NCBI GenBank assembly: GCA_013265495.1 | Contig: MU059523.1 | Coordinates: forward strand, 7,941,503 to 8,005,502 | DNA: 64,000 nt | Direction: 5' to 3' | Source: Vicugna vicugna | Lineage: Eukaryota | Shown: positions 11,401-47,856 of the stretch, piece by piece | Position numbering within the stretch: the stretch's first letter is position 1 | How the letters are laid out: every line of letters starts with the position of its first letter | Position numbers and translations under genes: made by a program | Notes under the pieces: generated by a model | Database searches by the model: none | Told to the model about the DNA's origin: nothing | The model's input: the letters and a program-made list of their open reading frames with translations, nothing else

Positions 11401-12466
11401 ATACTGTAAGCCTTTTCCCTACATGCTTTGAACCTTTTTTTTTTTTTCCCCAAAAAGCATGCAGGGCCTATTTTCGGATGCTTGATTATGGCAAGAAGGA
11501 AGAAAAGGAATGATGTTCGGTGTAATACAAGCAATTTGTAGAATCGAGCATACAGTTTTGCATAAAACATTGCAGGTTAAAATAATATTGTAGGTTTCAA
11601 GCCATTGCATTACAGTTGAGTAAGTGTCACAATTAGGTTTTGTAAAATTTAAAATCTAAGTTTCGAAGTGAAGCAATAAAACTAAATTCTTCAACGAGGA
11701 CTTTTACCTTCATACAGCACAGAATAGGTATTTTTATCTGGGTTGGAAAAGTTATTTACAACTAACATTGATTGAGTCTTGGTAAAAGTCCGATAACACG
11801 TGAAGAGAAATATCCCCTCGGCTCTCTAAAAGATCGTGGACGTGTTTGAGGTTAGAGAAAGTCATAGCGGTGGCAATGCTAGTCCCCTACCACGGCCAAG
11901 CATAAGGTGTGATCTTTAACCTAATTCAAAATTGAAAGCACCAAAAAACAATTTAGAGCTATAAAATGGGATTTGCTCTTGAATCCTCCATAATTAATAA
12001 CTAACAATTTAGATGCAGAGAGACAGCTAATGAGAGAAGTTTTCATTGGTGCTATTCAGTAGCTCACTTGAGTTGCCTTTTTAAAACCAGAGGTTTGTTT
12101 CCATTGAATTCAAGAACTCTTCATAAAATAGAGAAATACATATATCAAAGGAATTAAGTAAAAGTAGGTTAAAAATAAATAATCTTACAACAACATTTTA
12201 AATCCTTTAATGATTTAAAGAAAGGAAGACATATAACACTGAATGCTAAACAAGTCTTTTGAACTTCTCTTGAGACTTTTAGGTGTAGATTTAATCGTAT
12301 ATGTATATATATATATATATTTTACATTTTGCATGTAGGCCAGAGCTGTCTAAAATATCTCTTCATAGTAGGCTATAGGGATCTATCAGGAGATAGAATA
12401 AAATAAGGTCTGAGCATATTCTCAGTTTATTAGAGTATTTCTTTCTGCTTTGACAATCAGCAGGGA
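5500..12466 (-). other. HCN1: Putative long HCN1 3' UTR (distal boundary uncertain)
   Basis: Directly follows the stop codon, AT-rich and nearly free of recognisable TEs. Minus-strand AATAAA hexamers (plus tttatt) at 5545-5550, 5637-5642 and 5648-5653. The start of the UTR resembles the human HCN1 3' UTR as I recall it; the end position is inference. Confidence 0.5.
10223..10350. other. N gap (128 nt)
   Basis: Run of n in the sequence. Confidence 1.
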
Positions 12467-13487
12467 TCATAAATTTGAAGCAAATCGTGGCTTTTCTGCC
12501 TCTGGGTCTGTACTTAAGACTGACGATGACTCTCTCTGATGAGCCGCTGCTGCAGGAGGGGGTGCCGGGGGGACTCCTCGGTTGGGGGGGATGGCTCCCG
12601 ACGACATCTGTCGGAACAGGGTGACTCTCTGGGGGACAGTGCCCCGGCCGGCTGCCTGCACCGCAGTCACGGGCTGAGGGATGGAGGCCAGGGACTCGCC
12701 CACAGTGGGATGCGGTCTGGAAATCATGGTGGAAATCCTGGGTTGGGGGGGATGGCTCCCGACGACATCTGTCGGAACAGGGTGACTCTCTGGGGGACAG
12801 TGCCCCGGCCGGCTGCCTGCACCGCAGTCACGGGCTGAGGGATGGAGGCCAGGGACTCGCCCACAGTGGGATGCGGTCTGGAAATCATGGTGGAAAGCTC
12901 ATGGGGCAGCGAGGGCTGCGAGGCCGAGAGGGGCCGGACTTCGCGGGTCAGGCTGGGGTTGTGAAGCGCCTGCGTGCTCTTGTGCACTTCGTTTTTCGGC
13001 GTCGAGCTGCCGGATGCCTGCGGCTGGTGGGGCGGCGGCTGGGGCGGCGGCGGCTGGGACTGCTGGACGGGCTGCTGCTGAATGAGTGACAGCTGGGAAG
13101 CCGTGGGGGAGGCGTAGTGGAAAGTTCGAGAGGCCAGCGGGCTCTGGACGGGCGGGCTGCAGACCGCAGTGGTGTAGGAGCAGGGCGAGAGGATGGCCGA
13201 GGGCTGCGGGGTCTGCGTGCTGGGGCTGGGGGAGTGCAGGTTGCTGTGCGACAGGCTGGGGGCGGTGTACACCGGCGGAGACTGCGTCCTCACGCGGGAC
13301 GTCGGAGTGGCCGTCGAAGATGTGGAGTTCAGGGCCGTCATCTGGGGATAACTGAGGGGAGCGATCGCCTGCACCATCTCCCGGTCGTGTTTCACAATCT
13401 GCTTCAGGATCTCGTTCTCCTGGTTGTTGAAAACACCAGTGTTCAGATCCTTCTGGAACTTTTGCAGAAGAATTGAATTTTTCTTTC
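12467..13487 (-). CDS. HCN1: HCN1 terminal coding exon (exon 8 in human numbering), C-terminal cytoplasmic tail; interrupted as assembled by a 161-bp tandem duplication
   Basis: Acceptor ctgacag|GAAAGAAAAATTCA at 13487 (phase 1). Translates (G)[43 protein letters not shown]...[15 protein letters not shown]...[16 protein letters not shown]...EKPRFASNL*, stop TGA at 12469-12467. This matches the HCN1 C-terminus as I know it. 1021 nt minus the 161-nt duplication = 860 nt = 2 + 286 codons, in frame. Confidence 0.98.
12540..13390. other. GC/CpG-rich island overlapping the HCN1 terminal coding exon
   Basis: Abrupt switch from AT-rich flanks to dense CpG (e.g. gggcggcggctggggcggcggcggctggg); CpG o/e not computed. 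Confidence 0.75.
12575..12896. repeat. 161-bp head-to-tail tandem duplication within the HCN1 last exon
   Basis: 12575-12735 and 12736-12896 are identical except 12579 c versus 12740 g. Confidence 0.98.
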
Positions 13488-13854
13488 CTGTCAGCGAAAG
13501 AAAGATAGGCCCTTAGAAAGCCTACAAAAGACTGATGGCAACTCCAAGTGAGAGTGGCCTTGCAGACAGAAGGGTGGCAGTGTCTCATGGGAGGGGCTTA
13601 AACGCCACGTACTCACCTTCGGAAACCAAACAGAAACGTGGCTCCTGCCTTTCACGCTTCCTGTATCTTTCTGGGGAATCTTACCTTCTACACAAGTCAG
13701 GTTGAAAAGTGTGTAACATGGCAAAAGCCACCTTACAGAAGAAATGGAGATACGTGTCCTGAGGGCTACCTTGGGAGGGAAAAAAGGGCCTTTGGATCAG
13801 GATGAGCCTGGAATCAAGATTTCAGTTTAAATCTTCTTTTTCAAGAGAGGGCAA

Positions 13855-16716: not shown

Positions 16717-16881
16717 CTATCCGATCTAGTCGGTCAATGGCAACCGTCTCAAAGGCTCTTCTCATCATTGGATATTCCTCCAGGACCTCATTGAAATTGT
16801 CCACAGAAAGCGAATACAGACGACAATATGTGTCGGCTCGGACACTGGCAGTGCGGCGTCCCTTGGTCAGCAGGCAAATCT
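16717..16881 (-). CDS. HCN1: HCN1 coding exon 7 (CNBD phosphate-binding cassette, B and C helices)
   Basis: 165 nt. Acceptor tctttttag|AG at 16881, donor ATAG|gtactc at 16717. Translates (E)[54 protein letters not shown](G); phases match the flanking exons. Confidence 0.99.
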
Positions 16882-47615: not shown

Positions 47616-47856
47616 CTCCAAAGTAAGAGCCATCTGTCAGCTTCATTTCTTTACTGGATTTTGTGATGACACCANNNNNNNNNNNNNNNNNNNNNNNNNN
47701 NNNNNNNNNNNNNNNNNNNNNNNNNNNNNNNNNNNNNNNNNNNNNNNNNNNNNNNNNNNNNNNNNNNNNNNNNNNNNNNNNNNNNNNNNNNNNNNNNNNN
47801 NNNNNNNNNNNNNNNNNNNNNNCCACTAGTTTCCGACAGTTGAAGTTGACTATCTC
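47616..47856 (-). CDS. HCN1: HCN1 coding exon 6 (C-linker/CNBD), middle 148 nt are N
   Basis: Acceptor ccatctttag|GAG at 47856 gives EIVNFNCRKLV. After the gap GVITKSSKEMKLTDGSYFG(G), then donor GGAG|gtgag at 47616. 34+148+59 = 241 nt = 80 codons + 1. Confidence 0.97.
47675..47822. other. N gap (148 nt) inside HCN1 exon 6
   Basis: Run of n between codons for ...RKLV(A) and (A)GVITK. Confidence 1.

What the first reader, a model, noticed from the sequence alone, without database searches (positions are those of the whole stretch)
12575..12896. 161-bp tandem duplication frameshifts the HCN1 last exon and removes the C-terminal SNL motif
Seen: two adjacent 161-nt copies, 160/161 identical, with the only mismatch 5 nt from the junction. 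161 is not a multiple of 3, so the spliced frame ends ...[16 protein letters not shown] (TGA 12726-12724) instead of ...PPNRGVPP...KPRFASNL*. Established: the HCN C-terminal SNL tripeptide binds the TPR domain of TRIP8b (PEX5L), which helps control channel trafficking and dendritic targeting; a stop in the last exon normally escapes NMD. Inference: if real, this is a natural SNL-less HCN1 with an intact CNBD. However, near-perfect identity, a mismatch beside the junction, no flush microhomology, a GC-rich G-run context and N gaps elsewhere all fit two overlapping contig ends that failed to merge. I rate the artefact more likely.
Basis: partly seen in the sequence, partly recalled or inferred. 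Interest (0 to 1): 0.8.

Follow-up and report, generated by a model that had tools for sequence, protein, structure and literature searches.

The report
False 161-base duplication in HCN1
The last coding exon of the pacemaker-channel gene HCN1 in this camelid assembly holds a real-looking 161-base tandem repeat that breaks the reading frame, but it is most likely an assembly error, not a natural tail-less channel.

Summary
Bases 12575-12735 and 12736-12896 are adjacent 161-nt copies, 160/161 identical. The only mismatch is 12579 C against 12740 G. They lie in the last coding exon of HCN1 on the minus strand. The frame then ends ...IPPNPGFPP* at TGA 12726-12724 instead of ...KPRFASNL*.

The evidence favours an artefact.
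- Deleting either copy restores the frame.
- A RefSeq HCN1 from an independent chromosome-scale Vicugna assembly (GCA_048564905.1) matches all 248 residues up to the break. It shares a lineage-specific 5-residue deletion, has the segment once and ends in SNL.
- Ten other mammals are also single copy.
- At least 14 DNA runs of two organisms hold 90-93% of the locus's sampled 31-mers, yet none holds any of the three sampled junction words. One run of a third organism holds one of the three.
- The derived base sits 5 nt from the junction, and a second unusual C/G change lies 22 nt outside the repeat, in 66% GC sequence.
- Unchecked first-stage notes list several similar frameshifting tandem duplications elsewhere in this genome.

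Read laying failed (filter, then cap), so the source animal was never tested. I put the artefact at about 0.85 and a real private allele at about 0.1.

The parts
12736..12896 (-). Copy read first in the transcript (upstream in the gene). It encodes STMISRPH...GAIPPN and carries the derived base 12740 G, which turns codon cGa (Arg) into cCa (Pro) on the coding strand.
12575..12735 (-). Copy read second in the transcript. It carries the ancestral 12579 C (Arg codon, as in all orthologues) and continues into the normal tail ...KPRFASNL, but is out of frame in the assembled sequence.
12735..12736 (.). The novel junction (plus strand ...GGTGGAAA|TCCTGGGTT...). There is no microhomology. Thirty-five 31-mers (starts 12706-12740) are specific to it: 30 span the junction and 5 carry only 12740 G.
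12724..12726 (-). Premature TGA created by the +161 (that is, +2) frameshift. The protein ends ...IPPNPGFPP.
12467..12478 (-). Normal end of the gene: Ser-Asn-Leu codons (12478-12470) and TGA (12469-12467). They are reached only if one copy is removed.
12467..13487 (-). Coding part of the HCN1 last exon (exon 8), entered from a cag acceptor at 13490-13488. GC is 0.64, against 0.37 for the whole window.
16717..16881 (-). HCN1 exon 7 ([11 protein letters not shown]...AIDRLDRIG), with intact AG acceptor and GT donor. It sets the frame of exon 8.
12553..12553 (-). A second unusual C/G difference, 22 nt outside the repeat. The window reads Ala (gca) where the Vicugna RefSeq protein and nearly all the other aligned mammals read Pro.

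Best explanation
The 161-base tandem duplication is an assembly artefact. Two sequence blocks (contig ends, or blocks from merged assemblies) that truly overlap by 161 bases were laid end to end instead of being merged. The likely cause is a base difference 5 nt from the start of the right-hand block (12740 G against the true C), which is either an end-of-contig error or the other allele of a heterozygous site. The animal's HCN1 would then have one copy of this segment and a normal ...KPRFASNL end that binds the TPR domain of TRIP8b. The sequence facts, the absence of junction words from other animals and the single-copy state in another assembly are shown. The failed-merge mechanism and the state of the source animal are inferred.
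For: (1) Removing either copy restores the frame to ...KPRFASNL*.
(2) XP_072807162.1, HCN1 of Vicugna from the independent assembly GCA_048564905.1 (120.7-Mb contig), matches the window over all 248 exon-8 residues up to IPPN. It shares the 5-residue deletion that other mammals lack, holds the segment once and ends in SNL.
(3) Ten further mammalian orthologues are single copy with SNL.
(4) Fourteen DNA runs of organisms A and B, from at least six studies, hold 0.90-0.93 of the sampled 31-mers of 12100-13500. A query made only of junction-specific words (12706-12770, 3 sampled words) returned none of them.
(5) The only mismatch is 5 nt from the junction. The derived state is in the junction-side copy, and orthologues have Arg there. 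One random later mutation would land that close with a probability of about 0.06.
(6) A second unusual C/G change lies 22 nt away, in 66% GC sequence. This fits a locally poor consensus.
(7) Leads only: first-stage notes on the same genome list frameshifting near-perfect tandem duplications in TPO, HDAC4, NKD2, RERE, MUC2 and VENTX within about 400 windows. That is far more than a living animal would be expected to carry in constrained genes.
(8) False duplications are a documented and common class of assembly error (PMC9516828). One published alpaca assembly was built by merging two assemblies with Metassembler and then scaffolding (PMC6598621). I could not show that the window comes from it.
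Against: No reads or contigs of any run were laid on the window. The call was stopped by a filter on 12100-12140 and was still counted. The best holders reach only 0.93, so the source animal's own data may not be among the indexed runs, and a private heterozygous allele in that one animal would escape every test made here. One run (X27, organism E) holds one of the three junction-specific sampled words, and I cannot tell which word. There is no N gap next to the repeat. The four N runs show no overlapping flanks, and no other such repeat occurs in this window. The artefact therefore has no internal precedent within these 64 kb.
Confidence: 0.85

Rival explanations
1. A real, young tandem duplication, private to (and probably heterozygous in) the sequenced animal. 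Its mRNA would escape nonsense-mediated decay because the stop is in the last exon. It would give an HCN1 lacking the last 37 residues, including SNL. That protein would lose the downstream TRIP8b (TPR) contact while keeping the contact through the cyclic-nucleotide-binding domain. Distal dendritic enrichment would be expected to suffer while basic channel function remains.
For: The sequence as given contains it, with clean unique flanks and no adjacent gap. No test reached the source animal. One run of a third organism holds one of the three junction-specific words. Error-prone break repair can place a point change near a duplication junction (own knowledge). Loss of the SNL contact should be viable. 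In heterologous cells a single TRIP8b site suffices for surface trafficking, while both sites are needed for dendritic enrichment in CA1 (PMC7153792).
Against: The junction words are absent from every run that holds the locus. An independent Vicugna assembly and all other mammals examined are single copy. The SNL end is kept in every full C-terminus read here, which were all mammalian. If the mismatch arose after the duplication, 1/161 divergence implies an old allele, which conflicts with its absence elsewhere. The same genome reportedly holds many similar exon-breaking repeats (leads only).
Confidence: 0.1
2. A variant of the artefact (a heterotype false duplication). 12740 G is a true second allele (Arg to Pro) of a heterozygous site. 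The two haplotype ends were kept side by side, so the repeat is false but the G variant is real.
For: Five of the 35 window-specific 31-mers carry only 12740 G without the junction. A run holding exactly one of three sampled words (X27) is what a G-carrying, unduplicated genome would give. Heterozygosity is the main documented cause of false duplications (PMC9516828).
Against: The word held by X27 is unknown. None of the organism A or B runs holds any of the three words. Arg is the residue at this position in nine of the ten mammals and in the Vicugna and reindeer proteins; one Logan-derived sequence reads His.
Confidence: 0.25

Closest known systems
False (artefactual) duplications in draft genome assemblies, of heterotype or homotype kind (Ko et al. 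2022, PMC9516828)
   Same: Near-identical adjacent copies on one scaffold that break a conserved gene model. The difference between copies sits at the block end. The duplication is absent from another assembly of the same genus.
   Different: Those described are mostly kilobase-scale and often separated by a gap. This one is 161 bases and gap-free. The defining read-depth and read-pair signs could not be measured here.
HCN1 lacking the C-terminal SNL tripeptide, the engineered deletion used to study TRIP8b (reviewed in PMC7153792)
   Same: If the duplication were real, the encoded protein would lack the TPR-binding SNL end while keeping the rest of the channel.
   Different: The window's form would lose 37 residues and gain PGFPP, not just lose three residues. 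It is probably not a biological allele at all.
Vicugna HCN1, XP_072807162.1 (assembly GCA_048564905.1)
   Same: Identical over the 248 exon-8 residues before the break, with the same 5-residue lineage deletion. The tail is identical except for one residue.
   Different: The segment occurs once, the frame is intact and the protein ends in SNL. It has Pro where the window has Ala (position 12553).

Membership tests
HCN1 gene (last coding exon) | Orthology of the translated exon to HCN1 C-termini, with the correct splice frame from the preceding exon | tested here: met
   E-values of 1e-131 and similar to mammalian HCN1 C-termini. 248/248 identity to Vicugna HCN1. Exon 7 to exon 8 frame is G|GA KKNSILL.
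HCN1 gene (last coding exon) | C-terminal Ser-Asn-Leu in frame | tested here: not met
   As assembled, the frame stops at 12726-12724. SNL (12478-12470) is present but out of frame. It is in frame after removal of one copy.
Assembly false duplication (unmerged overlap) | No reads span the novel junction, and depth per copy is reduced | not testable with these tools
Assembly false duplication (unmerged overlap) | Junction absent from other individuals and from other assemblies of the taxon | tested here: met
   None of the runs holding 0.90-0.93 of the locus words holds a junction word. GCA_048564905.1 encodes a single-copy protein.
Assembly false duplication (unmerged overlap) | Copies (near-)identical, with any difference at the block end | tested here: met
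   160/161 identical. The mismatch is 5 nt from the junction and the derived base is in the junction-side copy.
Assembly false duplication (unmerged overlap) | Adjacent gap, or other examples at gaps in the same sequence | tested here: not met
   No N next to the repeat. The flanks of the four N runs share no more than 8-11 bases, as in controls. No other repeat of this kind occurs in the window.
Assembly false duplication (unmerged overlap) | Recurrence of the same error type across the assembly | tested here: inconclusive
   First-stage notes list similar exon-breaking tandem duplications in TPO, HDAC4, NKD2, RERE, MUC2 and VENTX. These are unchecked leads from other windows that I could not read.
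Real germline tandem duplication allele | Junction-spanning reads in the carrier, and the junction found in independent data | tested here: inconclusive
   Only one of three junction-specific words was found, in one run of a third organism. The carrier itself was not tested.

The most novel reading that the evidence does not exclude
The duplication is a true private allele of the sequenced camelid: a natural HCN1 that lacks its last 37 residues and the TRIP8b-binding SNL end, expressed because the stop lies in the last exon.
Probability: 0.1. Interest if true: 0.5.

Novelty: not a real feature. Interest (0 to 1): 0.1.

Why it matters
If this is an artefact, its main value is as a warning. Gene models of HCN1 from this assembly will show a false truncation or a 'low quality' fix. 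If the first-stage notes on TPO, HDAC4, NKD2, RERE, MUC2 and VENTX hold up, the assembly carries a systematic class of short tandem false duplications, which would inflate counts of gene loss in camelids. If the duplication were real, it would be a natural counterpart of the engineered SNL deletion, in a large mammal. That would be of moderate interest for how TRIP8b steers HCN1 into distal dendrites.

Tried and rejected
- Exact look-ups found nothing on record for the truncated product (217 aa from the ATG at 13377) or for the 86-aa tail ORF.
- A scan of metagenome contigs for the 20-mer at the end of the repeat unit gave 18 hits, all unrelated bacterial sequence by their flanks.
- A homologue search with the 86-aa tail found nothing. 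The search with the 253-aa exon translation found no camelid-like ORF; the best hit was 88% identical.
- I reached a full-length Vicugna protein only indirectly, through the representative search, then P0121, then the cluster listing.
- P0184, a 919-aa 'LOW QUALITY PROTEIN', looked like a possible read-through of the duplication, but it has a normal single-copy C-terminus.
- I checked whether the N runs are flanked by unmerged overlaps. They are not.
- DNA of the other Vicugna assembly was not returned because the gene range is too long. I did not pursue it further, partly because that range would cover the equivalents of the N runs.
- I could not establish which assembly the window comes from. 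'Alpaca-type' rests on an earlier agent's note plus the 248/248 protein identity to Vicugna.

Full report
**What is there**

Tandem Repeats Finder reports a single array at 12575-12896: period 161, exactly 2.0 copies, 99% matches, no indels, score 637. It is the only array scoring 100 or more in the whole 64-kb window. A base-by-base comparison gives 160/161 identities. The one mismatch is 12579 C against 12740 G. The similarity stops dead on both sides, so the junction has no microhomology.

**The gene**

A primate HCN1 protein aligns to the minus strand at 13500-12751 and 12760-12470 (last exon), at 16888-16694 (exon 7) and weakly at 47856-47617 (exon 6).
- Exon 7 runs 16881-16717 with an AG acceptor and a GT donor.
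- Its last base plus the first two bases of exon 8 (starting at 13487, after a cag acceptor) make the Gly codon of ...DRIG|KKNSILL.
- In that frame the exon reads through the first copy and then ends ...[11 protein letters not shown] at TGA 12726-12724.
- The second copy, now out of frame, continues to ...KPRFASNL and TGA 12469-12467.
- Deleting either copy restores a 285-residue exon translation ending in SNL.
- The exon 6 match lies largely inside the N run 47675-47822. The claim of an intact cyclic-nucleotide-binding domain therefore cannot be checked, and I did not try to fill the N run.

**Comparison with relatives**

Ten mammalian HCN1 C-termini found with the exon translation all hold the segment once and end in SNL. 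All but one (a Logan-derived sequence that reads His) have Arg where the junction-side copy has Pro.

No camelid sequence surfaced in the length-limited searches. I therefore reached full-length proteins through the representative library and a cluster listing. The cluster holds XP_072807162.1, HCN1 of Vicugna, 876 residues, encoded on a 120.7-Mb contig of assembly GCA_048564905.1. That protein:
- is identical to the window's exon-8 translation at all 248 residues up to IPPN;
- shares a 5-residue deletion ([11 protein letters not shown]) that other mammals lack;
- holds the segment once and runs on to KPRFASNL.

The window is therefore from a South American camelid or a very close relative, and an independent assembly of that group is single copy. 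The tail differs at one residue: the window has Ala (base 12553) where Vicugna and nearly all the other aligned mammals have Pro. This is a second C/G change, 22 nt outside the repeat.

**Evidence from public runs**

Fourteen DNA runs of two coded organisms, from at least six studies, hold 0.90-0.93 of the 132 sampled 31-mers of 12100-13500. Thirty-five 31-mers (starts 12706-12740) are specific to the duplicated form. Thirty of them span the junction and five carry only 12740 G.

A query consisting only of those words (12706-12770, three sampled words) returned none of the fourteen runs. Its only holder was X27, from a third organism, with one of the three words. The junction is thus not a common or fixed feature of these animals.

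X27's single word cannot be interpreted, because I cannot tell whether it spans the junction or only carries the G. A genome with the G variant but no duplication would give exactly this result.

The direct test was to lay contigs of X27, X1, X4 and X15 on the stretch. No top holder exceeds 0.93, so the source animal's own data may not be indexed. The source animal therefore remains untested.

**How it most likely arose**

The pattern is what two overlapping sequence blocks give when they are abutted instead of merged.
- The left block ends at 12735 with correct sequence.
- The right block starts at 12736, which is 161 bases 'too early'.
- The right block's fifth base differs from the true sequence, enough to defeat an end-overlap check.
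- The derived base lies in the junction-side copy. A random later mutation would fall within 5 nt of the junction only about 6% of the time.
- If the mismatch did arise after a real duplication, 1/161 divergence would imply an old allele, which conflicts with its absence from all other animals.
- The stretch has 64-66% GC in a 37% GC window and carries another unusual C/G change nearby. Both fit a weak local consensus.

False duplications caused by heterozygosity or read errors are well documented (PMC9516828). One published alpaca reference was produced by a MaSuRCA hybrid assembly, then a Metassembler merge with an older assembly, then two rounds of scaffolding (PMC6598621). The llama, guanaco and vicuna drafts were made with SOAPdenovo (PMC7331169). 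I could not determine which assembly the window belongs to, so the specific software step is not assigned.

**Leads from the scan's own notes**

These are unchecked. An earlier agent called the same genome alpaca-type. First-stage notes on it list near-perfect frameshifting tandem duplications in coding exons of TPO (80 bp), HDAC4 (94 nt), NKD2 (37 nt), RERE (124 bp), MUC2 (295 bp) and VENTX (14 bp), among about 400 windows read. If those notes are as accurate as this one, the rate extrapolates to hundreds of exon-breaking duplications per genome. That is not plausible for a living animal and is typical of a systematic assembly fault. I could not read those windows, so this counts as a lead and not as support.

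**What speaks for a real allele**

The sequence is clean. No gap adjoins the repeat. The flanks of the four N runs do not overlap each other (longest shared words of 8-11 bases, as in 190 control positions). The operators note that N runs may be deliberate masks.

Loss of the SNL contact would probably be tolerated. [quoted passage not shown] A heterozygous private allele in the donor animal is therefore biologically possible, and nothing done here excludes it.

**Verdict**

Within that, a heterozygous C/G site as the trigger has about 0.25. A real private SNL-less allele has about 0.1. The decisive test is to look for junction-spanning reads, or to run a PCR, on the donor animal.

Noticed in passing
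window 47617-47856 (N run 47675-47822): The weak match to HCN1 exon 6, part of the cyclic-nucleotide-binding domain, falls largely inside an N run.
   Followed up: no
window 12810-12830 and 12649-12669 (both copies): Camelid HCN1 lacks five residues (HGxGL in other mammals) between PVTAV and QAGGRG. The Vicugna RefSeq protein shares the deletion, so it is a true lineage feature and not an error of this assembly.
   Followed up: partly
window 12553: The window reads Ala (gca on the coding strand) where Vicugna XP_072807162.1 and nearly all the other aligned mammals read Pro. This C/G change, 22 nt from the repeat, is either a polymorphism or a consensus error.
   Followed up: partly
window 12100-13500 (runs X15, X16): Two 2025 RNA-seq runs labelled 'reproductive system metagenome' hold about half of the sampled words of the HCN1 last exon and 3' UTR. 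This suggests HCN1 transcripts in that tissue.
   Followed up: no
window 12100-13500: Eight runs from several studies and two organisms all stop at exactly 0.93 of the sampled words. About nine words are missing everywhere, of which three are junction words. The other six suggest roughly two more window-private differences, 12553 being a candidate.
   Followed up: no
window 13020-13058: A short imperfect GCGGCTGGGGCGGCG-type repeat (period 12-15, 2.6 copies) encodes the Pro/Gln-rich stretch of the HCN1 tail. Its length varies between mammals in the alignment.
   Followed up: no
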